Counted from the stretch's first letter, positions 37,830 to 61,186 are shown. The stretch: 64,000 nt of DNA from Haliotis rubra (GCF_003918875.1 NW_025767630.1:310001-374000), one strand, 5' to 3'. Notes: generated by a model from the letters alone, not told the origin. Numbers and translations: made by a program.

Positions 37830-38501
37830 TTAGTGTTTGGATTTCCTCAATTTCGCTCGAGCATTTTGAAACCAGACTTTTGTCACCTTCTTCGACAGTC
37901 CTGCGTCCATGGCAACCTGATCAAGGTGAAGGCTATTTGGGTTGGGGTCGATCTCGAAGTGGCGTTGTAGAGTGGCGACCTGGTCCTCAGTGAAGGCTGT
38001 TCGGAATCTCTTGGACATTGGTCGGCAGGTGACGTTCTCGTCGTCGGGGTTGAGGACGTGGACTCGACAAAGAATGCGGCCGTCGTGGATGGCAAAGTCT
38101 TCTCCTGTGGACAATTGTCTTTGGCACGTGCTGCACGAGAAACAGGCAAGGTGGTACATGTTCTCACCGGCCGATCTCACCCAGTCTCCAGACTCGATGG
38201 GTCGTAAACAGGAACTACACTTTGTCTGGTAAACTTTGGCGAAGACTCTCTGACAGAATATGTTTTCGTCCCTGACGAAGCATGTTGAATGTCCACCAAG
38301 TGTCACCTGACACACACAGCAACTCAGACAGTTCTCGTGCCACACGTGATTCCCAGCACGTAGATAGTATTGGTCGGTGATGACGTCACAGCACGTGAAA
38401 CAGATCGGCATGTCAGGGTCCGGGCTGAGACTAGTGAGATATGATTGTATCTCATCCTCGAGATCCGACGCTGAAGAGGACATATACGACGAGTGAGACA
38501 T
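37830..38501 (-). CDS. Intronless LIM-homeobox gene, copy 1 (Arrowhead/Lhx6/8-like; most divergent copy), 223 aa
   Basis: Single ORF with two LIM domains (CFTC...WHENCLSCCVC...CQRV; CSSC...YHLACFSCSTC...CRVH) and a homeodomain (KRFRTAF...WFQNARAK). TATATAA on minus strand at 38583-38589; AATAAA on minus strand at 37642-37647. Confidence 0.93.
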   Translation of the reverse strand: MSHSSYMSSSASDLEDEIQSYLTSLSPDPDMPICFTCCDVITDQYYLRAGNHVWHENCLSCCVCQVTLGGHSTCFVRDENIFCQRVFAKVYQTKCSSCLRPIESGDWVRSAGENMYHLACFSCSTCQRQLSTGEDFAIHDGRILCRVHVLNPDDENVTCRPMSKRFRTAFTEDQVATLQRHFEIDPNPNSLHLDQVAMDAGLSKKVTKVWFQNARAKLRKSKH

Positions 38502-38589
38502 GATGGAGCAAGTGCCGTTACAGATGTAGATGCAGCTCAGTCGAAGAAGGGAATGCGGATGATTGACGGTGCGTCCATGACGTTATATA

Positions 38590-39030
38590 CTTCTACGGAC
38601 ATCACGCTGAGTGAACGACTTCGGGAGTGACGGCACTGTCAGCGTCGGTATGATTGGCACCATCGATATTCAATCATTGGCTGATTGAGGCATGAGATAT
38701 ATTTACACCTTGTGCATATTGTTTCAGCTATGAGTGAACGACGCATTTGTTAGTCAGGTTGACACGCACCATCACGTATAATCTCGCGTTGCTTTGATTG
38801 ACACGCTTAACATTCAATCATTGACTGATAGGGGCATGGGATGTAGTTACGCGTCGTGTTGCTGTTACAAGTATGAGTGAACCACTTCGGGCGTGACGCC
38901 CTTGTTAGCCAGCTTGACATGCACCGTCACGCAAATCTCCGGGCGCTCTGATTGACTCCGTCAACAGTCAATCATTGACTGATAGGAACATGAGTTGTAT
39001 TTACGCGTCGTGTATACAGTTACTGTCCAA
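38590..39030. repeat. Three degenerate 123-143-bp tandem repeats directly upstream of LIM-HD copy 1
   Basis: GAGTGAAC recurs at 38609, 38732 and 38875, each followed by TGATTG(A/G)C...TCAATCATTG(A/G)CTGAT...CATG; homologues at ~43505-43760 and ~47927-48180. Confidence 0.8.
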
Positions 39031-39619
39031 TTGATTGACCAATCAATACAGCACCCCGAGCCCTACATCTACTGTTAATTCACCGAAACAACCACACACA
39101 CGTTTTTAAACTCCCACTCTTAATATTGCATACAATGAATAACATCTTTGCTATACATCTAAGACCAATCGGTTAACGATTTAAGAGAAAAAATTACATT
39201 TTGAAATGCATGGTACATATGTACATGCGTTTCCATGAATGATTGCGCATGTTTTCTAACATACCTAAACATCTTCCGACAACATTAAGAGTGAGTGAGT
39301 GAGTTTAGTTTTACGCCGCTTTTAGCAATATTCCAGCGTAAAACGGCGGGAGACACAAGGAATGGTCTTCACACATTGTACCCAGACAACATTAAGACCA
39401 AACCCGGGGTTGATAACATTTATTCAACATTATTCAACAAGTGAAAACTCGACGATTTGAAACAATGAATAACACAATTCACCAGACTTTCTCCGAGTCC
39501 ATTTATAATGGACATTACAGCAACGTATGTACTTCATTGTTTGAAACATCTTCACATTTAATCGGAACCAAAGATTAGCCGGTACATTCTCCTATTTGCC
39601 AAAGGGTCTCACCATGAAG

Positions 39620-39781
39620 GGGCGGTGGGGTAGCCTAGTGGTTAAAGCGTTGGCTCGTCACGCCGAAGACCCGGTTCGAATCCCCACATGGGTACAATGT
39701 GTGAAGACCATTTCTGGTGTCCCCGCATGATGTTGCTGGAATATTGCTAATAGTGGCGTAAAACCAAAACTCAGTCAGACA
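39620..39781 (+). mobile_element. SINE family A copy in the copy 1/copy 2 intergenic region
   Basis: 14-bp TSD GTCTCACCATGAAG at 39606-39619 and 39782-39795; the paralogous site near 44197 is empty. Confidence 0.9.
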
Positions 39782-40527
39782 GTCTCACCATGAAGACGCG
39801 TTACTCTGGATATGCACATGAGTGTTACTAAACAACATAATATCTGAGATTTGTTTCTCACCATCAATATTTCAGAGTGAACCACGGGGTGTTTGACCTG
39901 TGATCACCTCATGGCGCTTTTAAATATCATCATGGAAGTCGTGAACAACAATAAAAATAAGATTAGCTATGAATTTGGAAATATCACCACAGACCGAGAC
40001 ACATAAAGCTCAATAATTCTGTATAGAGATATATGAACGTTAAATATTTAATTACACCGTATTTCAACAATTGTTTTATCCCATTTCATCCAACAATTTG
40101 CTTTTTTTACTGCTTGGATGAGATGTATAACGCGAATTTGTCGCGCGATTAACCCGTGTGTGCATTAATACAATTGTTCTGTATTGACAAAGCGTAGGCC
40201 ACACAAAGAAATCTATTGTTTCCTTCTTATGATAGTTTTATCACAATATAAATGCTTGACTCGTAAGTTTGCAAATGGCAAATATTTTGCATCCATTATA
40301 TGAAATATGAACTGTTGTTAGTTTTTCTTTTGATTTATGAGATTTGTTTTAATAACATAACGTATTTGTGAACTGTGTGTTATGTCAAGCATCATCAACC
40401 TGCATGATGAGCGAGCTCATCGATGACAAGGAAACAGTGCAATGTTCAGTATCAATGATTACTGAGTGGACTCGTCGCGGCTGATCACTCTGATGTCATT
40501 GCTTGTCCAAACACTGATCTCGCGTCA

Positions 40528-40574
40528 TCATGGCACTCCAGTTCACTCTAAGATGCCAAGCCAACATTTAAATA
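40528..40574 (+). promoter_or_regulatory. Conserved proximal promoter of the LIM-HD genes (TCATGRCA-N5-GTTCACTC plus TATA-like box)
   Basis: GTTCACTC at 40541, 44963, 49382, 60413 (+) and 38609, 53741, 59170 (-), each 17-19 bp upstream of a TATA-like box and about 105-120 bp upstream of the ATG. Confidence 0.75.
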
Positions 40575-40661
40575 GACTTGATGTGTGCTGGAGTCATCAT
40601 TCCATCTGTCATCAGATCTCCACAACAAGTCCTCCTCCAGATCCTTCTGAGCTATTCCAAA

Positions 40662-41324
40662 ATGTCGGATATGTCATATGACTATCTATCCTCCGACTTG
40701 GAAGAATCGGCAGACTTCATCGCTCTCAGTTTCAACGTGGCTGACCCCTTGTGTTTCACGTGCTGTGACGTCATCACCGACCAGTACTATCTACGTGCTG
40801 GGGATCACGTGTGGCACGAGCACTGTCTGCGTTGCTGTGTGTGTCAGGTGACGCTCGGTGGACATTCTACTTGCTTCGTCAGAGACGGAAACATATTCTG
40901 TCAGAGAGACTTCGCCCAGGTTTATAAGACCAAATGTAGTTCCTGTTTACGACCCATCGAGTCTGGAGATTGGGTGAGATCGGCTGGTGAGAACATGTAC
41001 CACCTTGCATGTTTTTCGTGCAGCACGTGCCAAAGACAATTGTCCACAGGAGAAGACTTCGCCATACACGACGGACGAGTACTTTGCAGAGTCCACGCCC
41101 TCAACCCCGACGACGAGAACGTTAACTGCAGATCAAAATCCAAGAGATTCCGAACAGTCTTCAACGAGGACCAGGTAGCAGTTTTACAGAAGTACTTCGA
41201 CCTTGACACTAACCCAGCCGGAAGTGACCTCGGGATGATCGCCGAAGAAGCGGGTCTTCCCAGACGAGTGGCCCAAGTGTGGTTCCAAAATGCACGTGCT
41301 AAGCTCAAGAGGGCCATGCATTGA
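40662..41324 (+). CDS. Intronless LIM-homeobox gene, copy 2 (Awh/Lhx6/8-like), 220 aa
   Basis: ATG at 40662 (MSDMSYDY...) matches the start of the paralogs; the track start at 40578 is TTG. LIM-LIM-HD intact; AATAAA at 41578-41583. Confidence 0.95.
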   Translation: MSDMSYDYLSSDLEESADFIALSFNVADPLCFTCCDVITDQYYLRAGDHVWHEHCLRCCVCQVTLGGHSTCFVRDGNIFCQRDFAQVYKTKCSSCLRPIESGDWVRSAGENMYHLACFSCSTCQRQLSTGEDFAIHDGRVLCRVHALNPDDENVNCRSKSKRFRTVFNEDQVAVLQKYFDLDTNPAGSDLGMIAEEAGLPRRVAQVWFQNARAKLKRAMH

Positions 41325-42389
41325 ACATGACAACGTTTTGTATTGACAACTCTGGAACTTATTGTATTGTAGATAATTATGTATTTATAAATTGTCCTTG
41401 TTGTTGATATCGTCAACTAATCACTGCAGCTCGAAGTGCTCTATCTCAGCTAAGGCACTTAATTGTGTATATACTTTATTTATTTTACCACTTGTTATTA
41501 TTTATGCCATCAGTGACTGTTCTGTACCTAGCCAATATTTAACATGTAATTTATTTTATGTCCATACTTTGACCATTAATAAAGGATTCGACGCACATTT
41601 TATTTTGTTGTGTAAACAAGTGTAATGTAAAAGGTGCATAATAATATTTTGTTTACACTAGTGCTTCTCGAAGGGGAAGAGTGCACTTAATTTCCCTTCA
41701 GCAATATCACGGCGAAGGACACCAGAAATGGGCTTCACACATTGTACCCATGTCGGGAATCGAACCCGGGTCTTCGTCCATGACGTTATATGTTTCTACG
41801 TATACGGACATTACATTGAATGAACGACTTCGGGCTTGACAGCACAGCCAGCCACGTCAACGGGGTAGTCCCGTAAGTTCGACCTTTAGGTCGAGGTAAA
41901 ATTCCTTTGATGTTGAATGTTTTGAAAACGGATTAAGACACTGGTTTTCTACAAAATGTGAAATGTGTCCACTAAGGCAGCGAAATATGACATTTGTACC
42001 AGCTGGATGACATGTGAACCAGCGGCTTAAGTGAGTGAGTTTAGTTCTCTCAATTCATTAGTAGTAAGTTATTCAATTTCTTACATAAACTTGCATGCTA
42101 TAAGAATGTTGGAACTGACAGTTTTCATCATCATTTCCACAACTTCAGTTATGGCAAATGCACAATTGGTTATATCCTAGTTCTCGTGGTGGAAGATATA
42201 AATAAATGGTTATATTTATATGCATCGTGGAGATGCATTCAGAAAGACTGCATATCAGTCTCAACAGTGAACGACATAATTTCCCAAATACCTGGAGACC
42301 ACAACCACAGACCTGTACACAACGAAGTCAAGGTGAATCTTTTCGACTGTACCATTTCATCAATTCATGCAATAACAGAAACTTAATAC

Positions 42390-42665
42390 ATTGGTCTATA
42401 TAATTATCTAAATTAAAAGTTGATGGTTATACTCTCGGAACCATGAGATAGTAGCAATTCTTCTAAATCGTTTATAAAAATTGAAAACAGTAGCGGTGAC
42501 AAGTTTTCTCCTTGTCTTACTCCAGAGTGACTGAAGAATTAGTCCGAGTAGGATTTACTAATGTTAACACATGATTTGATATTATTATACATGTTCTGTA
42601 TGAGTAACATGTAGAAATTTTCCATTTATATTACACCTGAACATTTTTTGCCATAGCCCAATTAT
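42390..42665 (-). mobile_element. Decayed LINE RT fragment inside the duplicated unit (second copy ~46817-47092)
   Basis: Minus-strand translation LWQKMFRCNINGKF.../NMYNNIKSCV...GVRQGENLSPLLFSIFINDLE with stops and frameshifts. Confidence 0.75.
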
Positions 42666-45083
42666 CAAAAATACTGACGGTCCCCGCACAAACAACAACC
42701 TCGGGGGTTGGCATTGCCGTCTCACGAAGGTTGTGGGGATAACATCCCAACCTTTTCTCGAGTTGCCCAAGTTCTTGGCAGATGAAAAGTACTGAACGAG
42801 ACAAAGATGCTTCAGTACAATGCTGGCCNNNNNNNNNNNNNNNNNNNNNNNNNNNNNNNNNNNNNNNNNNNNNNNNNNNNNNNNNNNNNNNNNNNNNNNN
42901 NNNNNNNNNNNNNNNNNNNNNNNNNNNNNNNNNNNNNNNNNNNNNNNNNNNNNNNNNNNNNNNNNNGGAACGACTAGATATCTCGAAGTTCAGGTGTGCA
43001 AATAACGACCTGACATTGACGGAGTACCTGGAAAATGTCTCCTATTATTGTGTTAAGTTGTTGAGCTCGTGCTTCTTGGTTCTGGACCGTATATCTGTGT
43101 TGCCTGTATATTTTGCTTTCACCATATATGATTTGTGCTATTTAATTTAATTCATAAGGAAATGGTCATTTGTAGTGCTATTGTATGTTGTGTTATTTAA
43201 AGTTGCGTATTTTGGTGCTATAAACTTTTTTATGTATATATTATGTTATATGAATTTGTATTATATATTATGTAGACAATAGTAATTACCGTCACATTGA
43301 ATGTTTAATTAAAAATGATATTTTACAGCGTGAATCTTGTCCACTTATTTAGCGGTGAACATATTAACATTAACCCTACAGTTGTAAAAACATTGACTGC
43401 CAATTGTCTAGAACCAGTGGACCTTAAAGATACACCCCTGCAACCCGACCAGTTTGTTTTTACACCCATGCAAAGGTCGGACTGACGGGACCTTACCACG
43501 TTAACGCCGTCACATACAATCTCGCGGGGCTTTGATTGACTCAACCAATAGTCAATCATTGGTTGATGGAGGCATGAGATGTATTTACGTGTCGTGCTTA
43601 CGGTTACAGCCACCTAACTGAGTGAACGACTTCGGGCGTGACGCCTTGCTAGCCGGGTTGACACGCACCGTCACGTGCAATCTAACGCTTTGATTGACTC
43701 CTTCACGGTCAATCATTGATTGATAGGGGCATGGGTTGTGTCTACGTGTCGCAAATACAGTTAAGGTCGAACTGCTCGATATGTCAATGCTGTACCCCGA
43801 GCCCATCACCGTTCATTCACTGAAACAGACACGCAGAAGAATTCCATTCTAAATATTGCATACAATTAATAAAATCTTCACTATACAACTAAGACCAATC
43901 GGATAGCGATTTAAGAGAGACTATATTTTGTACTGTATGGTACACATCTATATACGTTTACGAAAGGCATTGCGTATGTGGTCCAACATACTTAAGATGC
44001 TTACAGCAACACAAATGGTCAAATCTGGGGTTGATAATCATAAACCTCGACATTGTAAAAATAAATAACAAATTCATCAGACTTTCCCTCATTCCAATTA
44101 AAATTGAGTTTGCAGCAAAACATTTACTTCATTTTCTAACACATCTTTGTATTTAAACAGAACAAAAGATGAGATGGTGCGTTATATGTGGCCAAGGGTC
44201 TCACCATTATGCAAAACATGTTATAATTACTCTGCAAATACACGTGATTATATGTATATTAGCATAAAATCTGCCGATTTGTTCCTGACCTTCAGCATTA
44301 GATTTCCGCGTGAACCGTGGGATGTTTAACCTATGATCAACTGATGGCCCTTTCAGATATGAGCATGTAAGTTGTCTACAACAATAAACATGTTAAAAAC
44401 ATATTTGGAACATTTTTTCGGACTGAAAATATGAAGACAGACCAGGACATACTAAGCTCAGGAATTCTATATAGCGGTATAGAAACGTTGGATATGTACT
44501 AACATCGTATTCAAATATTTGGTTTATCCCATTCCATCCAACAATTTTATTTACTTGACAGTTTGGATGAGACTTTAATTTGTAGCGCGCTAAACCCGTG
44601 TGTGCAATAATACAATGGTTCTGCACTGACAAAACATACTCCAAACACTAGACATCAATTGTTTCCTTGTAGTATATTTTTATCGTAATATAAGTATACA
44701 TGCTATGTATTTCAGTTGGCAAATGGCAAACATTTTGTATCTATAAAATATTGTATGAAATATGAACAACTGTTTCTTTTGATCCGTGAGATTTGTTTTG
44801 ATAACATAATATATTTGTGAACTGTGTGTTATGTCAAGCATCCAATGACAAGGAAACAATGCATCGATCAGTCTCAATGATTAATGGGTGAGCTCATCGC
44901 GGCAGATAACTCTGATGTCGTTGCTTGTCCAAACACTGATCTCGCGTCATCATGGCACTCCAGTTCACTCTAAGATGCCAAGCCAACATTTAAATAGACT
45001 TGATGTGTGCTGGAGTCGTCATTCCATCTGTCATCAGATCTCCACAACAAGTCCTCCTCCAGATCCTTCTGAGCTATTCCAAA

Positions 45084-45746
45084 ATGTCGGACATGTCATA
45101 TGACTATCTATCCTCCGACTTGGAAGAATCGGCAGACTTCATCGCTCTCAGTTTCAACGTGGCTGACCCCTTGTGTTTCACGTGCTGTGACGTCATCACC
45201 GACCAGTACTATCTACGTGCTGGGGATCACGTGTGGCACGAGCACTGTCTGCGTTGCTGTGTGTGTCAGGTGACGCTTAGTGGACATTCTACTTGCTTCG
45301 TCAGAGACGGAAATATATTCTGTCAGAGAGACTTCGCTCAAGTTTATAAGACCAAATGTAGTTCCTGTTTAAGACCCATCGAGTCTGGAGATTGGGTGAG
45401 ATCGGCCGGTGAGAACATGTACCACCTTGCATGTTTCTCGTGCAGCACGTGCCAAAAACAGTTGTCCACAGGAGAAGACTTCGCCATCCACGACGGCCGA
45501 GTACTTTGCCGAGTCCACGCCCTCAACCTCGATGAAGAGAACGTCAACTGCAGACAAAAATCCAAGAGATTCCGAACAGCCTTCAACGAGGACCAGGTAG
45601 CAGTTTTACAGAAGTACTTCGACCTTGACACCAACCCTACCGGAAGTGACCTCGGGAGGATCGCCGAAGAAGCGGGTCTTCCCAGACGAGTGGCCCAAGT
45701 ATGGTTCCAAAATGCACGTGCTAAGCTCAAGAGGGCCATGCATTGA
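45084..45746 (+). CDS. Intronless LIM-homeobox gene, copy 3, 220 aa
   Basis: Near-identical to copy 2, 4422 bp downstream; intact LIM-LIM-HD; AATAAA at 46005-46010. Confidence 0.93.
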   Translation: MSDMSYDYLSSDLEESADFIALSFNVADPLCFTCCDVITDQYYLRAGDHVWHEHCLRCCVCQVTLSGHSTCFVRDGNIFCQRDFAQVYKTKCSSCLRPIESGDWVRSAGENMYHLACFSCSTCQKQLSTGEDFAIHDGRVLCRVHALNLDEENVNCRQKSKRFRTAFNEDQVAVLQKYFDLDTNPTGSDLGRIAEEAGLPRRVAQVWFQNARAKLKRAMH

Positions 45747-48700
45747 ACATTACAACGTATTGTATTGAACCATCTGGAACTTACTAGTATTGTATTGTAG
45801 ATAATTATGTATTTATATATTGTCCTTCTTGTTGATAATCGCCAACTAACCACTGCAGCTTCAAGTGCTCTATCTCAGCTAAGGCATTTAATTATATATA
45901 TTATATTCCTTTTACCACTTGTTATTATTTATGTCATCAGTGACTATTTTGTACATAGTCAATGTGTAACGTGTAATTTATTTGATGTCCATTCTTTGAC
46001 CATTAATAAAGGATTCGACGCACATTTTATTTTGTTGTGTAAACAAGTGTAATGTAAAAGGTGCATAATAATATTTTGTTTACACTAGTGCTTCTCGCAG
46101 GGGGAAGAGTGCACTTAATTTCCCTTCAGCAATATCACGGCGAAGGACACCAGGGTGGGCTTCACACATTGTACCCATGTCGGGGATCGAACCCGGGTCT
46201 TCGTCCATGACGTTATATGTTTCTACGTATACGGACATTACATTGAATGAACGACTTCGGGCGTGACAGCACAGCCAGCCACGTCAACGGGGTAGTCCCG
46301 TAAGTTCGACCTTAAGGTCGAGGTAAAATTCCTTTGATGTTGAATGTTTTGAAAACGGATTAAGACACTGGTTTTCTACAAAATGTGAAATGTGTCCACT
46401 AAGGCAGCGAAATATGACATTTGTACCAGCTGGATGACATGTGAACCAGCGGCTTAAGTGAGTGAGTTTAGTTCTCTCAATTCATTAGTAGTAAGTTATT
46501 CAATTTCTTACATAAACTTGCATGCTATAAGAATGTTGGAACTGACAGTTTTCATCATCATTTCCACAACTTCAGTTATGGCAAATGCACAATTGGTTAT
46601 ATCCTAGTTCTCGTGGTGGAAGATATAAATAAATGGTTATATTTATATGCATCGTGGAGATGCATTCAGAAAGACTGCATATCAGTCTCAACAGTGAACG
46701 ACATAATTTCCCAAATACCTGGAGACCACAACCACAGACCTGTACACAACGAAGTCAAGGTGAATCTTTTCGACTGTACCATTTCATCAATTCATGCAAT
46801 AACAGAAACTTAATACATTGGTCTATATAATTATCTAAATTAAAAGTTGATGGTTATACTCTCGGAACCATGAGATAGTAGCAATTCTTCTAAATCGTTT
46901 ATAAAAATTGAAAACAGTAGCGGTGACAAGTTTTCTCCTTGTCTTACTCCAGAGTGACTGAAGAATTAGTCCGAGTAGGATTTACTAATGTTAACACATG
47001 ATTTGATATTATTATACATGTTCTGTATGAGTAACATGTAGAAATTTTCCATTTATATTACACCTGAACATTTTTTGCCATAGCCCAATTATCAAAAATA
47101 CTGACGGTCCCCGCACAAACAACAACCTCGGGAGTTGGCATTGCCGTCTCACGAAGGTTGTGGGAAAATAACATCCCAACCTTTTCTCGAGTTGCCCAAG
47201 TTCTTGGCAGATGAAAAAGTACTGAACGAGACAAAGATGCTTCAGTACAATGCTGGCCNNNNNNNNNNNNNNNNNNNNNNNNNNNNNNNNNNNNNNNNNN
47301 NNNNNNNNNNNNNNNNNNNNNNNNNNNNNNNNNNNNNNNNNNNNNNNNNNNNNNNNNNNNNNNNNNNNNNNNNNNNNNNNNNNNNNNNNGGAACGACTAG
47401 ATATCTCGAAGTTCAGGTGTGCAAATAACGACCTGACATTGACGGAGTACCTGGAAAATGTCTCCTATTATTGTGTTAAGTTGTTGAGCTCGTGCTTCTT
47501 GGTTCTGGACCGTATATCTGTGTTGCCTGTATATTTTGCTTTCACCATATATGATTTGTGCTATTTAATTTAATTCATAAGGAAATGGTCATTTGTAGTG
47601 CTACTGTATGTTGTGTTATTTAAAGTTGCTTATTTTAGTGCTATAAACTTGTTATGTATATATTATGTAGTATGAATTTGTATTATATATTATGTAGACA
47701 ATAGTAATTACCGTCACATTGAATGTTTAATTAAAAATGATATTTTACAGCGTGAAACTTGTCCACTTATTTTCCGGTGAACATATTAACATTAACCCTA
47801 CAGTTGTAAAAACATTGACTGCCAATTGTCTAGAACCAGTGGACCTTAAAGATACACCCCTGCAACCCGACCAGTTTGTTTTTACACACATGCAAAAGTC
47901 GGACTAACGGGACTTACCACGTTAACGCCGTCACATACAATCTCGCGGGGCTTTGATTGACTCAACCAATAGTCAATCATTGGTTGATGGAGGCATGAGA
48001 TGTATTTACGTGTCGTGCTTACGGTTACAGCCACCTAACTGAGTGAACGACTTCGGCAGTGACGCCTTGTTAGCCGCGTTGACACGCACCGTCACGTGCA
48101 ATCTAACGCTTTGATTGACTCCTTCACGGTCAATCATTGATTGATAGGGGCATGCGTTGTGTCTACGTGTCGCAAATACAGTTAAGGTCAAACTGCTCGA
48201 TATGTCAATGCTGTACCCCGAGCCCATCACCGTTCATTCACTGAAACAGACACGCAGAAGAATTCCATTCTAAATATTGCATACAATTAATAAAATCTTC
48301 ACTATACAACTAAGACCAATCGGATAGCGATTTAAGAGAGACTATATTTTGTACTGTATGGTACACATCTATATACGTTTACGAAAGGCATTGCGTATGT
48401 GGTCCAACTTACTCAAGATGCTTACAGCAACACAAATGGTCAAATCTGGGGTTGATAATCATAAACTCGACATTGTAAAAATAAATAACACAATTCATCA
48501 GACTTTCCCTCATTCCAATTATAATTGAGGTTGCAGCAAAACATTTACTTCATTTTCTAACACATCTTTGTATTTAAACAGAACAAAAGATGAGATGGGG
48601 CGTTATATGTGGCCAAGGGTCTCACCATTATGCAAAACATGTTACTCTGCAAATACACGTGATTATATGTATATTAACATAAAATCTGCCGATTTGTTTC

Positions 48701-50165: not shown

Positions 50166-52971
50166 ACATGACAACGTTTTGTATTGAACCATCTGGAACT
50201 TATTGTATTGTAGATAATTATATTTTTATAAATTGCTTTTGTTGTTGATATCGTCAACAAACCACTGCAGCTCGAAGTGCTTTATCTCAGCTAAGGCATT
50301 TAATTGTGTATATGTATACTTTATTTATTGTACCACTTGTTATTATTTATGCCATCAGTGACTATTTTGTACATAGCCAATATTTAACGTGTAATTTATT
50401 TTATGTCCATACTTTGACGCACAGTTATTTCAAATATTTGTTTTTGGTAGTAGTTAACGTTGAAATAACAGTTCATTGAGTGCCCCAACTGAAATGTAAG
50501 ACCCAAATATAACGAGAGGAATCTACTCTATCTCTTAAGGCGGTGCTAGGAGATATAACGGGAGTGAAGGAAAACTTGCTTTCTGTATTTTATGGAATAA
50601 ATGATTTTTGTGACAAAATTCCCAAGAGGATGCTGAATTTTATGTAGTAATAATATGAATAACATGGCCACTGAACTCCCCGCCACATGGATATGCCCTA
50701 AGCACACACAACTAAAATGTTAAACAACTAAATTGTCGACAATTAAGAAACAAATGGGTCTTCAGGCAGAAGAAAGGACGAGCCACTAAAGGCCGTATAA
50801 ACGCGTTTTGTACATATCAGGGACCCTTGTCACAAAGACATTTTGAAGGCACGATATCACACCACACTTCTCTAAAAATAAATAATGCATTTCTCTCAAT
50901 AATATTAACTATCAGCCCTCAGGGAAGTTACCATATAATTTATTAAGTGAGTGAGTTCAGTTTTACGCCATTTCAGCTATATGGCGGCGGTCTGTAAATA
51001 ATCGAGTCTGGACCAGACAATCCAGTGATCAACAGCATGAGCATCGATCTGCGAAACTGGGAACCGATGACATGTGTCAACCAAGTTAGCGAGCCTGACC
51101 ACCTGATCCCGTTAGTCACCTCTTACGACAAGCATGGGTTACTGAAGATCAATATTCTAACCCTGTATAATAAATAAATACATACATGCATGCATACGTG
51201 TTGAATGATANNNNNNNNNNNNNNNNNNNNNNNNNNNNNNNNNNNNNNNNNNNNNNNNNNNNNNNNNNNNNNNNNNNNNNNNNNNNNNNNNNNNNNNNNN
51301 NNNNNNNNNNNNNNNNNNNNNNNNNNNNNNNNNNNNNNNNNNNNNNNNNNNNNNNNNNNNNNNNNNNNNNNNNNNNNNNNNNNNNNNNNNNNNNNNNNNN
51401 NNNNNNNNNNNNNNNNNNNNNNNNNNNNNNNNNNNTGTGGTCATCTTAATACTTGGATCGCTTTGTGGATCTGATCCCAGACATACAGCCGATGCACGAT
51501 AAAACAAAATTCTAATTGCTTTACATTTCGTTCAAATAACAACAGAACAAAAAAAAATATTAAATGCTACAATACTATCAAGCATGTAGATGCATTTCAT
51601 TTACAAATGGTAGTCAGCTTAAATTCTGTGCTTTTCACACATTGTTTGCTGATGTACAAATATAAAATGCTTAAGCTATTATAATACATGTAATGAGAGT
51701 AAAAAGAATACCTTCCAAGCTCTTGTTTGATCTATGAACTGACTAGTAAATGTATGTACGTTTTATATGAGCATGTGTGACATAATGTATTTGAACATCT
51801 GGAAAATAAAAGGTAACCCCACCCCCACCCCCCACACACACACCCCAAAAAATAAAAAATACAAAAATTACAAAAATCCCGAAACAACAGAACTTCCAGC
51901 GACTTTTAGGACTTAGTTACATGGGGAGTTACACATGATTCCGGATAACAAGGGTATCAACACGAAGATGAAGCGAACGCTCAAGAAATCGTCTTCTGCC
52001 CCATTTTCATGTGTCCCCACCTTTTTGCATCATTGTAAACGTCACTGATGTAAATATTAAATGGTGTTAGGACCCCGTGGTCAAATATGGCCTTTTCTTT
52101 CACAGCAGTTCATGCAGAAATTTGGGAAATTTGATTTTAACCTGATATTATTATTATCATTTTTTTATTTATACTTTTCTATTATTTCTTTTCCTCGTGT
52201 AGTTTAAAATAATATTTTCTTTACTGAGAAAGTGTAACTCCGAACATAGCAGGTTACATGAGACCACTTTCTGAAAAACACTGTATTGATTGATTCCATC
52301 CAGTTTCTGTCCCTGCAGTGGTGTTATGTGACTCGATGTTTCAGGACTTTTATTGTAAATTATAGCAGCTGTATTATGGTGAAGATGTACAAAGATGTTT
52401 CTGTCCAGCTATGAATGAATACCTGTGGAAAAAAAAAGATTTTAACCTGATCAGATTCGATTGATAAAGTTGAATTTGACAATGTTGAATTTGATAATGT
52501 TGAATTTGATAATGTTGAATTGTGTCTTGTAACCCTTCACATAAAAGTGGACGACTGCGATGCATGCATGGGGAGGAGACATCTACTGCTTGAGTACACT
52601 GCGTGCATATACATATCATATGATTGCCCTCGTGGTCAAGTGGATATTGTGTTTGTTCGTAGAGCAGAAAGGTAGCGGTTCGAACTCTGGTCTCGTCAGA
52701 ACAAAAGCTATTGAAAGATAATCTTATACAACATGATAAAATGTGCATTGAATAATTTATTAACAGTTTAATATATACACACGAAATATACCACAATCAA
52801 ACATTGGCTATGTACAATGTAGTCACTGATGGCATGAATAATAAGGGGGCACAATAAATAATAACATTCATCCCTATTCATGAAGAGCACTTCAGACTGT
52901 ACCGGTTGTTTTATATCAGCAGTAAGTCATGTCACATAATTATTACTGCCTGAATGTGTGAAATATCACAT

Positions 52972-53634
52972 TCACTGCATGGCTCTCTTGAGCTTAGCTC
53001 GGGCATTCTGGAACCACACTTGGGCCACTCTTCTGGGAAGACCCGCTTCTTCGGCGATCCTCCCGAGGTCACTTCCTGTAGGGTTGGTGTCAAGGTCGAA
53101 GTACTTCTGTAAAACAGCTACCTGGTCCTCGTTGAAGGCTGTTCGGAATCGCTTGGACTTTGGTCTGCAGTTGACGTTCTCGTCGTCGGGGTTGAGGACG
53201 TGAACGCGGCAAAGGACTCGACCGTCGTGGATGGCGAAGTCTTCTCCTGTGGACAACTGTCTCTTGCACATGCTGCACGAGAAACATGCAAGGTGGTACA
53301 TGTTCTCACCGGCCGATCTCACCCAATCTCCGGACTCGATGGGTCTTAAACAGGAACTACACCTTGTCTTATAAACGTAGGCGAAGTCTCTCTGACAGAA
53401 TATGTTTCCGTCTCTGACGAAGCAAGTAGAATGTCCACCGAGCGTCACCTGACACACACAGCAACGCAGACAGTGTTCGTGCCACACGTGATCCCCAGCA
53501 CGTAGATAGTACTGGTCAGTGATGACGTCACAGCACGTGAAACACAAGGGGTCAGCCACGTTGAAACTGAGAGCGATGAAGTCTGCCGATTCTTCCAAGT
53601 CGGAGGAGAGGAGTTCATATGACATATCCGACAT
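52972..53634 (-). CDS. Intronless LIM-homeobox gene, copy 5, 220 aa
   Basis: Intact LIM-LIM-HD ORF; TATAAAT on minus strand at 53717-53723. Confidence 0.95.
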   Translation of the reverse strand: MSDMSYELLSSDLEESADFIALSFNVADPLCFTCCDVITDQYYLRAGDHVWHEHCLRCCVCQVTLGGHSTCFVRDGNIFCQRDFAYVYKTRCSSCLRPIESGDWVRSAGENMYHLACFSCSMCKRQLSTGEDFAIHDGRVLCRVHVLNPDDENVNCRPKSKRFRTAFNEDQVAVLQKYFDLDTNPTGSDLGRIAEEAGLPRRVAQVWFQNARAKLKRAMQ

Positions 53635-55439
53635 TTTTAGGGTGCAAAGGAGGTCTTACTGATGCCTTGATGAAGACGATGGAGAATGGAATGACGACAG
53701 CGGCGAACAAGAAGTGATTTATATGTTGGTTTGACAACTTGAGTGAACAAGCGTGTCATGATGATAAGTGTTTTAACACGTCATGGCGACCTATCGATTA
53801 GCTGATTGGCGATCTGATCGATGCATTGTGATTGGCAACGTGATTGCATCTCACAACTGAGCAGATGATGTTAAACCTTAATTGGTAATGATTAATGATT
53901 TAAATTTAATGCTATTTATGTCCCGTGTCAGCCTGTTACTTTGTGCCGTTTTTGTAATTAATTAGTTTAAGGATCCCCCAACAGTGAAAGTAAAGAAAAT
54001 AGAAATAATATAAAAAAAACTGAGAGTTTCTTTTTATTGTCGCCTACTCTGCAAAACCCATTAATTCAGAGTAATGATCAGAGTAGTCTCCAGCAGCATT
54101 ATTGTAATTTCACATGACGAGGCCAAGACTGACTGAATAATATAATGAGAAAGTGTAATCCCAAATATAACATGTGTTACGTACATGATCTTGTTCACCT
54201 TATAACAAACACAAAGGATTTGTTTATATCTGTCGACCATTGTTGAGAAGTTAAGGTGAAAAATGTGGCGTTTGTATAATGCATATTCATACACTTTGAT
54301 CATATTTACAAGTGTACCTTTTGATGCGTATCATAAGTTGAATGACCAAAACCTGTCGATGTTGTTGACAAAGCGAGGAATGTCTGATACTATTTTTTTA
54401 TTTTCCATTTTGAAAAGATAACCAAATATACCACCGCTCCTCTCCACAACTTCTCATGACAAAGTCATTTTTTTACCGTTAAAGATGTTACTGTGGAAAC
54501 GTGGATTGTGTGTGACCACAAGAAGGAACTACATTATTTATTGAGAAGCAAAGACGAAAATTATCTGTCTTTAAATTATTTGGAATTCCAAAATTATCAT
54601 TATGAATAGTTTAATTATCCAGCTGTTTTTATTATTGAATTTAAAACATCAATTAGCCCGCTTATTTTCTTTTCAGTTCTATCATGTTGAGGAAAGTTCA
54701 GGTTGAATATGAAATGATGAATTGAAAGGGAACTCCCCAAAAATAGAATATTTGCAACAACCTGCAAACAATAGATATTTTCAAAGATTTATGGAATGTG
54801 GGCATAAGATTTTTTACGTGGCCTTGTGTAAACATAAATCTACTGTTGGAATGTCCGTGTTACGTTATGCCAGAAATATTCTGTTGCCGCACTATCAAAA
54901 TATGACAATATTGTTAGAATCACAAACATATGGCTTTTTCAGGTTCTCAACAATGTAGTCACGTTTATCTAAACAAACAAAGACATAAAAACACCATGAA
55001 TTCTCTATGATTTCTTGTTGGAGATTTATCAGAGCTCTTCCGGTGAAGTCTGTGTCACGCCCGAGACAAACATCATCGAGGCGTAAAAGTAACGTTTAGC
55101 GTGACTTAACTAGTTGTCAAGTATACTAGTATTTCCGGACGGAGGGGTCAATCTTCGTGGGGTCAGCGGCTTGATTGCCTGGGCAGTAACGTTCACTTAG
55201 TTGTAAAAACATATTGACTGATTGACCGGTGTGAAATAATTAAGAAAACAAGTTCATAACGGCACTGCTCATCACAGATTAATCACTGCACTGACCAGCA
55301 CTGACCACGGACCGGTCACAGTGTGACACGATACTCGTCATGTGTCAGCACATCCAAGCTGACAAAGTCCCGAGTATAAAGGTAACAGAATCAGGTCTAC
55401 AGGCACTTCTCCCCTCACCTTCTCCTGGAAATCTACGCA

Positions 55440-56105
55440 ATGTCGGACACATCATATGACCTCATGTCCTCCGACTTGGAAGAATCAGCAGACGTCATCG
55501 CTCTCAGTTTCAACATGGCTGACCCCTTGTGTTTCACTTGCTGTGACGTCATCACCGACCAGTTCTATCTACGTGCGGGGGATCACGTGTATCACGAACA
55601 CTGTCTGCGTTGCTGTGTGTGTCAGGTGACGCTTGGTGGACATTCTACTTGCTTCGTCAGAGACGGGGACATATTCTGTCAGAGAGACTTCGCCTACGTT
55701 TATAAGACAAGGTGTAGTTCCTGTTTAAGACCCATCGAGTCTGGAGATTGGGTGAGATCGGCCGGTGAGAACATGTACCACCTTGCATGTTTCTCGTGCA
55801 GCATGTGCAAGAGACAATTGTCCACAGGAGAAGACTTCGCCATCCACGACGGTCGGGTACTTTGCCGAGTCCACGCCCTCAACCCCGACGAAGAGAACGT
55901 TAACTGCAGACACAATTCCAAGCGATGCCGAACAGCCTTCAACAAGGACCAGGTAGCAGTTTTACAGAGGTACTTCGACCTTGACACCAAACCTACCGGA
56001 AGTGATCTCGGGAGGATTGCCGAAGAAGCGGGCCTTCCAAGACGAGTGGCCCAAGTGTGGTTCCAAAATTCACGTGCTAAACTCAAGAAGAGAGCCATGC
56101 AGTGA
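55440..56105 (+). CDS. Intronless LIM-homeobox gene, copy 6, 221 aa
   Basis: Intact ORF with private changes (HVYH, KRCRT, DTKP, WFQNSRAK); TATAAA at 55375-55380. Confidence 0.93.
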   Translation: MSDTSYDLMSSDLEESADVIALSFNMADPLCFTCCDVITDQFYLRAGDHVYHEHCLRCCVCQVTLGGHSTCFVRDGDIFCQRDFAYVYKTRCSSCLRPIESGDWVRSAGENMYHLACFSCSMCKRQLSTGEDFAIHDGRVLCRVHALNPDEENVNCRHNSKRCRTAFNKDQVAVLQRYFDLDTKPTGSDLGRIAEEAGLPRRVAQVWFQNSRAKLKKRAMQ

Positions 56106-58398: not shown

Positions 58399-59076
58399 TC
58401 AGTGCATGGCTCTCTTGAGCTTAGCTCGGGCATTCTGGAACCATACTTGGGCCACTCTTCTGGGAAGACCCGCTTCTTCGGCGATCATCCCGAGGTCACT
58501 TCCTGTAGGGTTGGTGTCAAGGTCGAAGCACTTCTGTAAAACAGCTACCTGGTCCTCGTTGAAGGCTGTTCGGAATCTCTTGGACTTTGGTCTGCAGTTG
58601 AAGTTCTCGTCGTCGGGGTTGAGGACGTGAACGCGGCAAAGTACTCGACCGTCGTGGATGGCGAAGTCTTCTCCTGTGGACAACTGTCTTTGGCACGTGC
58701 TGCATGAGAAACATGCAAGGTGGTACATGTTCTCACCGGCCGATCTCACCCAATCTCCAGACTCGATCGGCCTTAAACAGGAACTACATTTGGTCTTATA
58801 AACCTGGGCGAAGTCTCTCTGACAGAATATGTTTCCGTTCCTGACGAAGCAAGTAGAATGTCCACCGAGCGTCACCTGACACACACAGCAACGCAGACAG
58901 TGCTCGTGCCACACGTGATCCCCAGCACGTAGATAGAACTGGTCAGTGATGACGTCACAGCACGTGAAACACAAGGGGTCAGCCATGTTGAAACTGAGAG
59001 CGATGAAGTCTGCTGACTCCTCCAAGTCAGAGGAAAGATAGTCATATGATATGTCCGACATTTTGGAGGAACCCAT
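58399..59076 (-). CDS. Intronless LIM-homeobox gene, copy 7 (225 aa from first ATG; paralog-equivalent ATG at 59061 gives 220 aa)
   Basis: Intact LIM-LIM-HD ORF; TATAAA on minus strand at 59145-59150. Confidence 0.94.
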   Translation of the reverse strand: MGSSKMSDISYDYLSSDLEESADFIALSFNMADPLCFTCCDVITDQFYLRAGDHVWHEHCLRCCVCQVTLGGHSTCFVRNGNIFCQRDFAQVYKTKCSSCLRPIESGDWVRSAGENMYHLACFSCSTCQRQLSTGEDFAIHDGRVLCRVHVLNPDDENFNCRPKSKRFRTAFNEDQVAVLQKCFDLDTNPTGSDLGMIAEEAGLPRRVAQVWFQNARAKLKRAMH

Positions 59077-59399
59077 GGTGAACTATAGCAATACACCTAT
59101 GTTTTCAGGAGGAGAAACGTACAACTCGGAGCACACTTACACCATTTATAGGTTGAAGTTGGCACATTAGAGTGAACGACAGTGTCATGACACTGACTGT
59201 TGTGACACGCACAGTGGTCACCGATCGTCGTAATCAGTTGATGTCCAATCAAGGATTAATCACCCAGTCGTGTGACCATATCTCATAGTAACATTAAAAA
59301 AACACCCAATCATTAGGCCCCCTCGCACGGGTCATCTCAGTACGATAACAGCTTTATTATACGCTGATTGCTATGAATACACAAGGCGTTCAATAAAAA

Positions 59400-59725
59400 C
59401 ATGATGTGTTTGATGCAAAAATATATCCTAGTCTTTTATATAGCGCAGAAATGTGGAGAATAAATACATTTGGAAAATTAGAAAAGGTAAATCTGTATGC
59501 TTGTAAAAGGTTTTTGGGTGTTAAACAAAACACTCCAAATATCATGATCTGTGGAGAATGCGACAGGTTTCCTTTATATATACATGTATATGCTCATATT
59601 TGAAAGTAATCCGGTATTGCATAAAGGTATTACACACGCCAACATATCGCTTACCAAAGAAATGCTATAATATGATGCTTTTATTTGATGGAAATGTGGA
59701 TAAAAACTGGGTTACTGATGTAACA
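59400..59725 (+). mobile_element. Fragment of a related RTE-X-like LINE ORF2 (post-RT region)
   Basis: FDAKIYPSLLYSAEMW...CKRFLGVKQNTPNIMICGECDRFP...RLPKKCYNMM parallels 2080-2400. Confidence 0.75.
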
Positions 59726-60523
59726 AATGTTATATTTGGGATTGCACTTTCTTAGTAAATTACAGATTCTAGTACGTTTCTTAGGTTGAGCCCCATCCGG
59801 GATTCGAACCCACACCCTCAATTATAGCATAAAAACACACAAAAGATGACCCTTTTTTCCAAGTATGAAACTATGGATATATAGAAAATGATTTTTGGGT
59901 CGGGTGTCGGGCTGAATACAAATGATGGGTTTCTGCACTATATTGCAGATGCTCTTATATCACTGTAGTTAATTTGTAATACAGTGAACGATCAACGTTT
60001 CTCATATGCAACAATCGGGTCTTCTTTTAAGTAAAATGTACATCTAAGTGTATCAGATTCACATATTGTGCGTCTAAATGTATGATGTTGTATTTTATAT
60101 ATTAAATCGAACTTTATCGTTGCTGATCCGAATATATGATACGACTAATCAGGTCAAAATATCTATATTCAGATACATGTAATACTTTCACAGAAAAAAT
60201 ATTCCTAAAAATAAAAATGTCATATTTTTCTGATGCGGCTGACTGAAGCTTCGCCGTCTTGAAATTTAAACTGGTTAATTAGGTGATCAAGTGATCAGTT
60301 AATCATTACAGAAAACACCTGATTACTAATCAATCAGCAATTGCTGCTGTGACACGCGCTGGTGACGTCACAGCGTGTCATAACGGTCTTCACTCCTCGT
60401 CATGGCATATGCGTTCACTCGGAACTGCCACCGATGCATATATTAACTGCTGTGCACAACATTTTCAGCATCACTTATCACGTTATCTTCATCTTGCTCT
60501 ATTTCCCCCGGTGCTTCTTCACA

Positions 60524-61186
60524 ATGTCGGACATGTCATATGATCTCCTCTCCTCCGACTTGGAAGAGTCAGTAGACTTCATCGCTCTCAGTTTCAACAT
60601 GGCTAACCCCTTGTGTTTCTCTTGCTGTGACGTCATCACTGACCAGTACTATCTACGTGCTGGGGATCGCGTGTGGCACGAGCACTGTCTGCGTTGCTGT
60701 GTGTGTCAGGTGACGCTTGATGGACATTCTACTTGCTTCGTCAGAGACGGGAACATATTCTGCCAGAGAGACTTCGCCTACGTTTACCAGACAAAGTGTA
60801 GTTCCTGTTTACGACCCATCGAGTCTGGAGATTGGGTGAGATCGGCCGGTGAGAACATGTACCACCTTGCATGTTTCTCGTGCAGCATGTGCAAGAGACA
60901 GTTGTCCACAGGAGAAGACTTTGCCATCCACGACGGTCGAGTACTTTGCCGCGTTCACGTCCTCAACCCCGACGACGAGAGCTTCAACTGCAGACCAAAG
61001 TCCAAGCGATTCCGAACAGCCTTCAACGAGGACCAGGTAGCTGTTTTACAGAGGTACTTCGACCATCACACTAATCCTACCGGAAGTGACCTCGGAAGGA
61101 TCGCCGAAGAAGCGGGTCTTCCCAGAAGAGTGGCCCAAGTATGGTTCCAGAATGCCCGAGCTAAGCTCAAGAGAGCCATGCAATGA
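60524..61186 (+). CDS. Intronless LIM-homeobox gene, copy 8, 220 aa
   Basis: ATG at 60524 (MSDMSYDLL...); the track start at 60362 is GTG and lies upstream of the TATA-like box at 60439. Domains intact. Confidence 0.94.
   Translation: MSDMSYDLLSSDLEESVDFIALSFNMANPLCFSCCDVITDQYYLRAGDRVWHEHCLRCCVCQVTLDGHSTCFVRDGNIFCQRDFAYVYQTKCSSCLRPIESGDWVRSAGENMYHLACFSCSMCKRQLSTGEDFAIHDGRVLCRVHVLNPDDESFNCRPKSKRFRTAFNEDQVAVLQRYFDHHTNPTGSDLGRIAEEAGLPRRVAQVWFQNARAKLKRAMQ

What the first reader, a model, noticed from the sequence alone, without database searches (positions are those of the whole stretch)
37830..61186. Cluster of eight intact, intronless, minimal Arrowhead/Lhx6/8-like LIM-homeobox genes
Seen: eight single-exon ORFs of 220-225 codons within 23.4 kb, none disrupted, each with a TATA-like box. 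Each encodes a ~30-aa acidic leader, LIM1, LIM2, a linker of about 12 aa and a homeodomain, and stops 1-2 residues after it. Established: invertebrate LIM-HD families are normally single-copy, multi-intron and slowly evolving. The motifs HCLRCCVC, DWVRxA, HLACF, RQLSTGExFA and DxNPxGxDLxRIA are Awh/Lhx6/8-type. Inference: a retrocopy of Awh was amplified locally into a lineage-specific array. Compact TATA-driven multicopy transcription-factor genes suit rapid, high-dose expression, for example in early embryos. With no C-terminal tail they could also titrate the Ldb/Chip cofactor. I do not know of a described LIM-class expansion like this.
Basis: partly seen in the sequence, partly recalled or inferred. 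Interest (0 to 1): 0.93.

Follow-up and report, generated by a model that had tools for sequence, protein, structure and literature searches.

The report
Abalone array of intronless Awh-like genes
Abalone genomes carry a conserved cluster of seven or eight short, intron-free copies of the nerve-cell regulator gene Arrowhead (Awh); the copies are intact and under selection, share a promoter motif and are kept alike by copying sequence from one another, and no paper describing such an expansion of this gene class was found.

Summary
The window holds eight intact single-exon ORFs (220-225 codons), each LIM-LIM-homeodomain, ending one residue after the homeodomain. The three N gaps are intergenic.

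The genome is a Haliotis species, probably H. rubra. The same array, collinear in its flanks, exists in H. asinina, H. rufescens and H. cracherodii. All 30 copies examined are intact, with dN/dS 0.05-0.27.

The proteins nest inside the Awh/Lhx6/8 clade. They align end to end with the 5-exon abalone Awh, including a leader seen only in Haliotis and Gigantopelta Awh among the sequences compared. Awh lies on another chromosome, which favours a retrocopy origin.

New findings:
- There are two types: one single-copy (c1) and one multicopy (c2-c8).
- Coding sequences evolve in concert. Flanks are orthologous by position, but paralogues within a species are closer than positional orthologues (dS 0.11-0.33 against 0.37-0.54). 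The AU test rejects positional orthology (p about 1e-109).
- Conversion between c1 and the others covers only the LIM domains.
- A bipartite motif plus TATA box is conserved before most copies.

Expression is untested here. An "Awh-like" transcript switched on in maturing H. laevigata ovary is only a lead.

No paper describes the array, although RefSeq annotates the genes automatically.

The parts
37830..38501 (-). c1, type A gene (223 aa): LIM1-LIM2-homeodomain, single copy with 1:1 orthologues in four Haliotis species
   Evidence: ORF and Pfam. Orthologues are in cluster 3. Flanks are collinear with H. asinina. It is a mosaic: against type B, dS is 0.33-0.44 in the LIM region and 1.0-1.5 in the homeodomain. 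The 8th zinc ligand of LIM1 is V instead of D in this genome only.
40662..41324 (+). c2, type B gene (220 aa)
   Evidence: part of the 4.4-kb tandem unit
45084..45746 (+). c3, type B gene (220 aa)
49503..50165 (+). c4, type B gene (220 aa)
   Evidence: AlphaFold2 model: pLDDT 84-92 for the LIM domains, 94-96 for the homeodomain, and a disordered leader at residues 1-25.
52972..53634 (-). c5, type B gene (220 aa); positional orthologue of H. asinina p4
55440..56105 (+). c6, type B gene (221 aa) with its own promoter type; positional orthologue of H. asinina p5 and H. cracherodii p4
58399..59076 (-). c7, type B gene (225 aa, or 220 aa from the ATG at 59061); positional orthologue of H. asinina p6
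60524..61186 (+). c8, type B gene (220 aa); positional orthologue of H. asinina p7
39801..50418 (+). About 2.4 tandem units of 4.4 kb (90-96% identical) carrying c2-c4; includes N gaps 42829-42966 and 47259-47389 at the same point of successive units
38583..38616 (-). c1 core promoter: GTTCACTC box, then TATATAA 19 bp further on; the TATA box starts 88 bp before the ATG
40531..40573 (+). c2 promoter: TGGCAC-N4-GTTCACTC, then a TATA-like box; the same element lies at 44953-44995 (c3) and 49372-49414 (c4)
53717..53758 (-). c5 promoter: TGACAC-N4-GTTCACTC, then TATAAAT
55372..55382 (+). c6 TATAAAG box; a promoter type without the GTTCACTC box, conserved in the positional orthologues of two other species
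59144..59187 (-). c7 promoter: TGACAC-N4-GTTCACTC, then TATAAAT
60403..60446 (+). c8 promoter: TGGCAT-N4-GTTCACTC, then ATATATTAA

Best explanation
This is a functional array, specific to the abalone lineage, of short intronless transcription-factor genes descended from Awh (Lhx6/8 family). It most probably began as a retrocopy of Awh mRNA inserted on another chromosome. The copy lost the C-terminal tail and then duplicated into at least six positions (one type A, five type B) before the four sampled Haliotis species split. Later tandem amplification occurred at different positions in different lineages. Each gene has its own TATA promoter. Most promoters carry a conserved bipartite element, TGRCAY-N4-GTTCACTC.

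The coding sequences are kept alike by recurrent gene conversion that stops at the ends of the ORF. Between type A and type B, conversion covers only the LIM1-LIM2 module. The result is two homeodomain variants sharing one partner-binding module.

The proteins keep the zinc ligands (all of them in type B; c1 of this genome has V at one LIM1 ligand) and the DNA-contact residues of Awh. They should therefore bind Awh-type sites and the Ldb/Chip cofactor.

Shown: structure, conservation, selection, conversion and promoter motif. Inferred: the retrocopy origin, DNA and Ldb binding, and a germline or early-embryo role at high dose.
For: Intactness and domains.
Conservation: 30 of 30 copies are intact in four species.
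Selection: dN/dS is 0.05-0.27 for paralogues and orthologues and 0.11-0.17 in every region.
Awh descent: the 120 best hits include no other LIM-homeodomain class, and nearly all named ones are Awh or Lhx8. The array nests inside Lhx6/8/Awh with Lhx2/9 as outgroup, across a 100/100 branch. It is 49% identical to Haliotis Awh over residues 1-228, including the leader MSDMSxDxxSSDxE, which only Haliotis and Gigantopelta Awh share.
Retrocopy: the parent has introns after residue 33, in codon 94, after 164 and after 260. It lies on another chromosome or scaffold.
Conversion: paralogue homology ends within a few bases of the ORF. Flanks are collinear between species. dS is 0.11-0.33 within the window against 0.37-0.54 for positional orthologues. 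The AU test rejects positional orthology (delta lnL 269, p 2.7e-109). Trees built from the LIM region and from the homeodomain disagree for c1.
Promoter: 7 hits against 0.12 expected, and 6 against 0.18 expected. The element is kept in the other species and in two metagenome contigs.
Taxonomic restriction.
Expression lead.
Against: No transcript of any copy was seen with these tools. Identifying the ovary-induced H. laevigata transcript (best hit XP_046546407.1, H. rubra) as an array member rests on elimination only.
No poly(A) tract or target-site duplication remains.
The parent's own promoter carries the same two half-sites next to its TATA box, which a simple retrocopy would not inherit.
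In protein trees the array sits on a long branch beside fast-evolving bivalve Awh rather than beside Haliotis Awh. This is probably long-branch attraction.
Binding to Ldb and to DNA is inferred from conserved residues only.
Confidence: 0.8

Rival explanations
1. The proteins act mainly as antagonists. Lacking the C-terminal tail, they occupy Awh sites and/or soak up Ldb/Chip, as LMO proteins do, and so damp LIM-homeodomain complexes instead of activating targets.
For: They end at homeodomain position 61 and lack the 46-residue tail of Awh. The LIM module is the most strictly shared part, homogenised even between type A and type B (dN 0.03-0.05). The DNA-contact residues equal those of Awh.
Against: Nothing is known here about any activity of the Awh tail. 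LIM-homeodomain proteins can activate through Ldb-mediated complexes without a tail of their own (established knowledge, not tested here). The homeodomain is under the same purifying selection as the LIM domains (0.11 against 0.13), which a pure cofactor sponge would not need.
Confidence: 0.3
2. The founder was a DNA-level duplicate of Awh that kept part of the promoter and later lost its introns (for example by recombination with a cDNA), not a classical retrocopy.
For: The same half-sites (GTGAAC and RTGYCA) lie next to the TATA box in both the array promoters and the parent's promoter. The core is conserved as far as Gigantopelta Awh.
Against: All three introns within the retained region are missing at once, and the locus is on another chromosome. 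The spacing and orientation of the element differ from the parent's. No other upstream similarity was seen.
Confidence: 0.2
3. The copies expanded independently in each species, with no gene conversion, which would explain why coding sequences group by species.
For: Species-wise clustering in the CDS tree. Lineage-specific tandem units do exist: 4.4 kb here and 3.6 kb in H. cracherodii and H. rufescens.
Against: Flanks of c1, c2-4, c5, c6, c7 and c8 are collinear with H. asinina p1-p7 at 79-85% identity over 1.0-2.6 kb, while paralogue flanks are unalignable. The special c6 promoter is shared by positional orthologues in three species. The AU test points the same way.
Confidence: 0.03
4. The copies are processed pseudogenes or an assembly artefact (collapsed or duplicated haplotypes).
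For: The ORFs are intronless. Assembly gaps lie inside the tandem part.
Against: All 30 copies examined are intact. dN/dS is far below 1. The promoter is conserved. Copies differ by 4-10% in DNA, too much for alleles. The same array appears in three independent assemblies, two of them at chromosome scale.
Confidence: 0.02

Closest known systems
Canonical Awh / Lhx6/8 (Drosophila Arrowhead, vertebrate Lhx6 and Lhx8; Haliotis Awh, 279 aa)
   Same: Same domain order. The array is 49% identical across leader, LIM1, LIM2, linker and homeodomain. It has the same DNA-contact residues and nests within this clade.
   Different: No introns (the parent has four in its coding region). No C-terminal tail. 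Seven or eight copies instead of one (oysters have two, PMC5322547). Protein change is about 4-8 times faster: dN 0.052 against 0.012 between H. asinina and H. cracherodii. The promoter has a TATA box plus a bipartite element.
DUX4 / Dux macrosatellite arrays of mammals (from my own knowledge: an intronless retrocopy of a DUX gene amplified in tandem, active at zygotic genome activation)
   Same: A homeobox retrocopy amplified into a local multicopy array of short intronless genes that evolve in concert.
   Different: A different homeobox class (PRD-like double homeodomain against LIM). Dux units are near-identical whole repeats. Here most copies share only the ORF and sit in alternating orientation with unique flanks. 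Expression timing is unknown here.
Obox, Rhox and ETCHbox (LEUTX, TPRX and others) arrays of mammals; SPILE TALE-class genes of spiralians
   Same: Lineage-restricted, fast-evolving duplicates of a conserved homeobox parent. ETCHbox genes also show tandem arrays and gene conversion (PMC8208926, abstract seen). Novel homeobox genes of oysters are recruited to early and late development (PMC5322547).
   Different: Those belong to the PRD or TALE classes. No LIM-class case was found in the literature searched. The abalone copies keep strong purifying selection and an unchanged recognition helix.
LMO (LIM-only) proteins
   Same: A short protein dominated by a tandem LIM1-LIM2 module of the kind that binds the Ldb1 LIM-interaction domain. 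LMO4-Ldb1 and LMO2-Ldb1 structures are among the sequence matches.
   Different: The array proteins keep a complete, selected homeodomain, so they are not LIM-only.

Membership tests
LIM-homeodomain proteins (LIM-class homeobox) | Two tandem N-terminal LIM zinc fingers followed by a homeodomain | tested here: met
   Pfam LIM (two stretches) and Homeodomain in all eight copies. The AlphaFold2 model is confident for both LIM domains and the homeodomain.
LIM-homeodomain proteins (LIM-class homeobox) | All 16 zinc ligands and the homeodomain DNA-contact residues (R3, R5, V47, Q50, N51, R53) present | tested here: met
   Conserved in all type B copies of four species. The one exception is c1 of this genome, which has V for the 8th ligand of LIM1.
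Lhx6/8 / Awh family | Closest relatives and tree position within Lhx6/8/Awh rather than another LIM-homeodomain class | tested here: met
   The 120 best hits include no other LIM-homeodomain class, and nearly all named ones are Awh or Lhx8. The next class, apterous/Lhx2/9, scores about 145-160 bits against about 200-217 for Awh. The array nests inside the Awh clade, with Lhx2/9 split off by a 100/100 branch. The Lhx1/5, Lhx3/4, Islet and Lmx classes were not included in the tree.
Lhx6/8 / Awh family | Collinear similarity outside the domains (leader and linker) to the same lineage's Awh | tested here: met
   End-to-end alignment with Haliotis Awh. The leader motif is shared only with Haliotis and Gigantopelta Awh.
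Lhx6/8 / Awh family | Canonical gene anatomy: multi-exon gene and a C-terminal tail after the homeodomain | tested here: not met
   The parent has 5 coding exons and a 46-residue tail. The array genes are single-exon and stop at homeodomain position 61.
Retrogene (processed copy) | Lacks the parent's introns and lies at an unlinked site | tested here: met
   Three parental intron positions fall inside the aligned region and are absent. In H. asinina the array is on CM074531.1 and the parent on CM074527.1. The two also lie on different scaffolds in H. rufescens and H. cracherodii.
Retrogene (processed copy) | Poly(A) remnant, target-site duplications, and no inherited promoter | tested here: inconclusive
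   No A-run follows the polyadenylation signals, but the event is old. The promoter shares two half-sites with the parent's promoter.
Gene array under concerted evolution | Paralogues within a species more alike than positional orthologues between species, with orthologous flanks | tested here: met
   dS is 0.11-0.33 against 0.37-0.54. The AU test gives p 2.7e-109.
Germline / early-embryo homeobox arrays (Obox, Dux, ETCHbox, Rhox, SPILE type) | Expression restricted to gonad, oocyte or cleavage stages | tested here: inconclusive
   One 'Awh-like' Trinity gene of H. laevigata reads about 0 in 10 immature gonads and 4.6-41 in 9 of 10 maturing ovaries (log2 fold change 6.2, padj 2e-5). That it is an array member is inferred by elimination only.
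LMO-like Ldb/Chip sponge | LIM-only protein that binds the Ldb LIM-interaction domain | tested here: not met
   A complete homeodomain is present and under purifying selection. Ldb binding itself cannot be tested with these tools.

The most novel reading that the evidence does not exclude
The array is a maternal or zygotic-activation-stage regulator set of abalone, a LIM-class counterpart of Dux, Obox or SPILE. It would be made at high dose from many short TATA-driven intronless genes in oocytes or cleavage embryos. Gene conversion would hold one Ldb-binding LIM module constant across two homeodomain variants.
Probability: 0.3. Interest if true: 0.75.

Novelty: new variant of a known kind. Interest (0 to 1): 0.6.

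Why it matters
LIM-homeodomain genes are among the most conservative developmental regulators, usually six to eight per invertebrate genome with one or two Awh (PMC5322547). This locus more than doubles that class in abalone with compact intronless genes that have stayed intact across the genus.

It gives a clean natural case of domain-limited gene conversion: the ORF only, and between the two types the LIM module only. It also offers a small conserved promoter element that can be tested directly.

If the copies prove to be oocyte or early-embryo genes, they would extend the pattern of young homeobox arrays acting in early development from the PRD and TALE classes to the LIM class. They would also supply candidate markers for gonad maturation in a farmed animal.

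Tried and rejected
1. More copies or fragments in the window: none.
2. Frame problems from the N gaps: none, as all three gaps are intergenic.
3. Transcript evidence by exact-protein look-up: every array protein is recorded on a genome contig only, so there is no RNA evidence from these tools.
4. Direct identification of XP_046546407.1: the window's own accession numbers are hidden, so only an argument by elimination was possible.
5. Array-like proteins in other taxa: the 1.84-billion-representative search gave only canonical Awh-type clusters. Its top hit is a mis-modelled Awh with a duplicated LIM region.
6. Dating the origin from the protein tree: the array sits on a long branch beside fast bivalve sequences with weak support, so the tree was not used for dating.
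7. GC-biased conversion: GC3 is 0.56-0.66 against 0.51 in the parent. This is suggestive at best.
8. A transposon vehicle for the copies: rejected, because paralogue homology stops at the ORF ends and no terminal repeats are shared.
9. Naming the factor that binds the bipartite motif: no basis, so left open.
10. Earlier scan notes s1-339738 (promoter motif) and s1-339996 (c1 mosaic) concern this same stretch. Both were re-tested and hold. The lost zinc ligand turned out to be specific to this genome's c1.


Full report
**Observation.** The window holds exactly eight ORFs of the described kind:
- c1 37830-38501(-)
- c2 40662-41324(+)
- c3 45084-45746(+)
- c4 49503-50165(+)
- c5 52972-53634(-)
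- c6 55440-56105(+)
- c7 58399-59076(-)
- c8 60524-61186(+)

Each scores as two LIM domains plus a homeodomain in Pfam. tblastn with the copies finds nothing else in the 64 kb. The proteins are 220-225 residues. They have an acidic leader that AlphaFold2 predicts to be disordered. The LIM domains have pLDDT 84-92, the linker is short and of low confidence, and the homeodomain has pLDDT 94-96. They stop at homeodomain position 61.

**Assembly gaps.** The three N gaps are all intergenic. Two of them sit at the identical point of two successive 4.4-kb tandem units that carry c2-c4. No reading frame crosses a gap. Only the number of such units is uncertain.

**Source genome and wider distribution.** The nearest database proteins are 'LIM/homeobox protein Awh-like' of Haliotis asinina, H. 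rufescens and H. cracherodii.

The window's own proteins are listed without names. The 90% cluster holds seven unnamed members, matching the seven type B copies here. All named members come from those three species. By elimination, and from my own knowledge of which abalone genomes have RefSeq annotation, the window is probably H. rubra.

I fetched the arrays of the other three species. They hold 7, at least 7, and 8 full copies. All 30 ORFs are intact.

A search of 1.84 billion cluster representatives found no array-like family in any other taxon. Two short metagenome contigs encode a 69%-identical relative with the same promoter layout. They probably come from another abalone or vetigastropod whose DNA was in the sample.

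**Descent from Awh.** The 120 best hits include no other LIM-homeodomain class, and nearly all named ones are Awh or Lhx8, from sponges to vertebrates. The next class, apterous/Lhx2/9, scores clearly lower. In a tree rooted on Lhx2/9 the array nests inside the Lhx6/8/Awh clade, across a 100/100 branch.

The array protein aligns end to end with residues 1-228 of the 279-residue Haliotis Awh at 49% identity. The alignment includes the leader MSDMSxDxxSSDxE, which among the sequences compared occurs only in Haliotis and Gigantopelta Awh. This points to the vetigastropod Awh as the parent. The protein tree places the long array branch beside fast-evolving bivalve sequences with weak support. I read that placement as long-branch attraction.

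**Origin.** The parent gene has five coding exons, with introns after residue 33, in codon 94, after residue 164 and after residue 260. The first three positions fall inside the region that the array genes cover without interruption.

In H. asinina the parent lies on chromosome CM074527.1 and the array on CM074531.1. The two also lie on different scaffolds in the two Californian species. This is the expected picture for a retrocopy. No poly(A) remnant or target-site duplication survives.

**Selection.**
- Pairwise dN/dS is 0.08-0.27 within the window and 0.05-0.26 between positional orthologues.
- It is 0.11-0.17 in each of the leader, LIM, linker and homeodomain regions.
- Between H. asinina and H. 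cracherodii the parent has dN 0.012 and dN/dS 0.018. The type A orthologues have dN 0.052 and dN/dS 0.10.

The array proteins therefore change several times faster than Awh but remain clearly constrained. Pseudogenes are excluded.

**Two types and an old locus.** c1 (223 aa, type A) has 1:1 orthologues in all four species. c2-c8 (220 aa, type B) are the multicopy type.

DNA comparison shows that the flanks are collinear between the window and H. asinina (79-85% identity over 1.0-2.6 kb):
- c1 matches p1
- c2-c4 match p2 and p3
- c5 matches p4
- c6 matches p5
- c7 matches p6
- c8 matches p7

There are matching relations to the Californian species. The ancestral array thus had at least six positions in alternating orientation. 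Later tandem amplification hit different positions: the c2-type unit here and in H. asinina, and the c7-type unit (3.6 kb) in H. cracherodii and H. rufescens.

**Concerted evolution.** Within the window, homology among c5-c8, and between them and c2-c4, stops within a few bases of the ORF ends. Yet their synonymous divergence is only 0.11-0.33. That is lower than between positional orthologues (0.37-0.54), which are no closer to each other than any window-asinina pair.

The coding tree groups copies by lineage. A topology constrained to positional orthology is rejected (delta lnL 269, AU p 2.7e-109).

The group c6 / Has_p5 / Hcra_p4 shares a distinctive promoter, which proves their orthology. 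Their coding sequences nevertheless cluster with their own species' copies. Recurrent gene conversion confined to the ORF explains all of this. Independent expansions do not.

Type A is a mosaic:
- Against type B its LIM1-LIM2 region has dS 0.33-0.44 and dN 0.03-0.05.
- Its homeodomain has dS 1.0-1.5 and dN about 0.25.
- In a LIM-only tree each c1 joins its own lineage's type B copies. In a homeodomain-only tree the c1 orthologues form a distant clade.
- Lineage-specific residues shared by both types in the LIM region show the same thing.

**Promoters.** Every copy has a TATA-like box 66-105 bp before the ATG. In most copies the box is preceded, 17-20 bp upstream, by GTTCACTC and, 4 bp further up, by TGRCAY.
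- GTTCACTC followed by a TATA-like box occurs 7 times in the window against 0.12 expected.
- The bipartite element occurs 6 times against 0.18 expected, always before a type B gene.
- It is kept in the other three species and in the metagenome contigs, although the surrounding DNA of paralogues is unalignable.

Polyadenylation signals lie about 110-260 bp after most stops.

One point is unexplained. The parent Awh promoter has the same half-sites (GTGAAC-AC-ATGTCA) 9 bp before its own TATAAAG. The core of this element is conserved in Gigantopelta.

**Likely function.** The zinc ligands are conserved in all type B copies; the one exception is c1 of this genome, which has V at the eighth ligand of LIM1. 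The base-contacting homeodomain residues equal those of Awh in both types. The LIM pair matches solved LIM-Ldb1 complexes in sequence. I therefore infer nuclear LIM-homeodomain factors that bind Awh-type sites and the Ldb/Chip cofactor and lack the Awh tail. Whether they activate or compete is open.

Many short, intronless, TATA-driven genes suit bursts of high-dose expression. The only expression lead is a preprint on H. laevigata (10.1101/2025.08.18.670794). [quoted passage not shown] No H. rubra canonical Awh appears in the protein collection. The hit is therefore probably an array member, but this is not proven.

**Literature.** Four full-text searches found no description of this array or of any comparable LIM-class expansion. 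The oyster survey lists eight LIM-class genes, two of them Awh (PMC5322547). The genes are, however, auto-annotated in RefSeq for the abalone species.

**Verdict.** The functional ideas remain untested. This is a new variant of a known kind, of moderate to high interest to evo-devo and gene-family specialists.

Noticed in passing
L004:2826-2860, L011:2822-2856, L012 about 2870-2905: The multi-exon parent Awh gene has GTGAAC-AC-ATGTCA 9 bp before a TATAAAG box about 150 bp before its ATG. The core GTGAAC..GTCAC..TATA and three CCAAT-type boxes are conserved between Haliotis and Gigantopelta. The half-sites are the same as in the array promoters.
   Followed up: partly
window 37830-38501 (c1), LIM1 last ligand: c1 of this genome has V where its three orthologues and all type B copies have the eighth zinc ligand D (CQRV against CQRD). 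This is a species-specific change or a sequencing error.
   Followed up: yes
L006:1-1004 and L013:1-1191: Two metagenome contigs (ENA ERZ27264536 and ERZ23498712) encode a third, 69%-identical intronless Awh-like gene. It has the same GTTCACTC-TATA promoter, an upstream in-frame ATG giving a similar acidic leader, and an AATAAA soon after the stop. The contigs are probably host DNA of an unsampled abalone or vetigastropod.
   Followed up: partly
L010:1613-1702, 3734-3832, 7350-7448, 10974-11072; L008:10974-11054, 14584-14664: In H. cracherodii and H. rufescens each 3.6-kb tandem unit carries an extra fragment of 27-33 codons from the homeodomain end, about 320 bp after the stop. One N-terminal fragment of 30 codons lies at the array edge.
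   Followed up: no
window 27801-27872 (+): tRNA-Asp (GTC), 61 bits in Rfam, in a stretch collinear with H. asinina.
   Followed up: no
window 34211-34375 and at least eight other places (3622-3775, 4143-4293, 10309-10478, 14291-14451, 15132-15297, 16370-16529, 19120-19277, 39617-39777): A dispersed element of about 160 bp with a weak tRNA-like head (Rfam tRNA, 30.6 bits). Many copies at 80-90% identity occur in the other Haliotis loci, so it looks like a SINE. A second element of about 200 bp lies at 3051-3239, 19930-20158, 23613-23840, 37367-37594 and 62670-62913.
   Followed up: no
window 32499-33737, 34999-36725, 7051-7361: Satellite arrays with units of 52/425 bp, 36 bp and 46/138 bp. The 36-bp array produces the spurious repetitive 159-aa ORF at 35841-36320.
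   Followed up: no
window 1449-2078 (+), 15724-16080 (-): Transposon remnants: a reverse-transcriptase fragment (RVT_1, E 3e-14) and a Tc1/mariner-like helix-turn-helix ORF.
   Followed up: no
window 42829-42966 and 47259-47389: Two N gaps lie at exactly the same point of successive tandem units, with identical letters on both sides. They fall inside a stretch of about 1.6 kb that H. asinina lacks at that point.
   Followed up: partly
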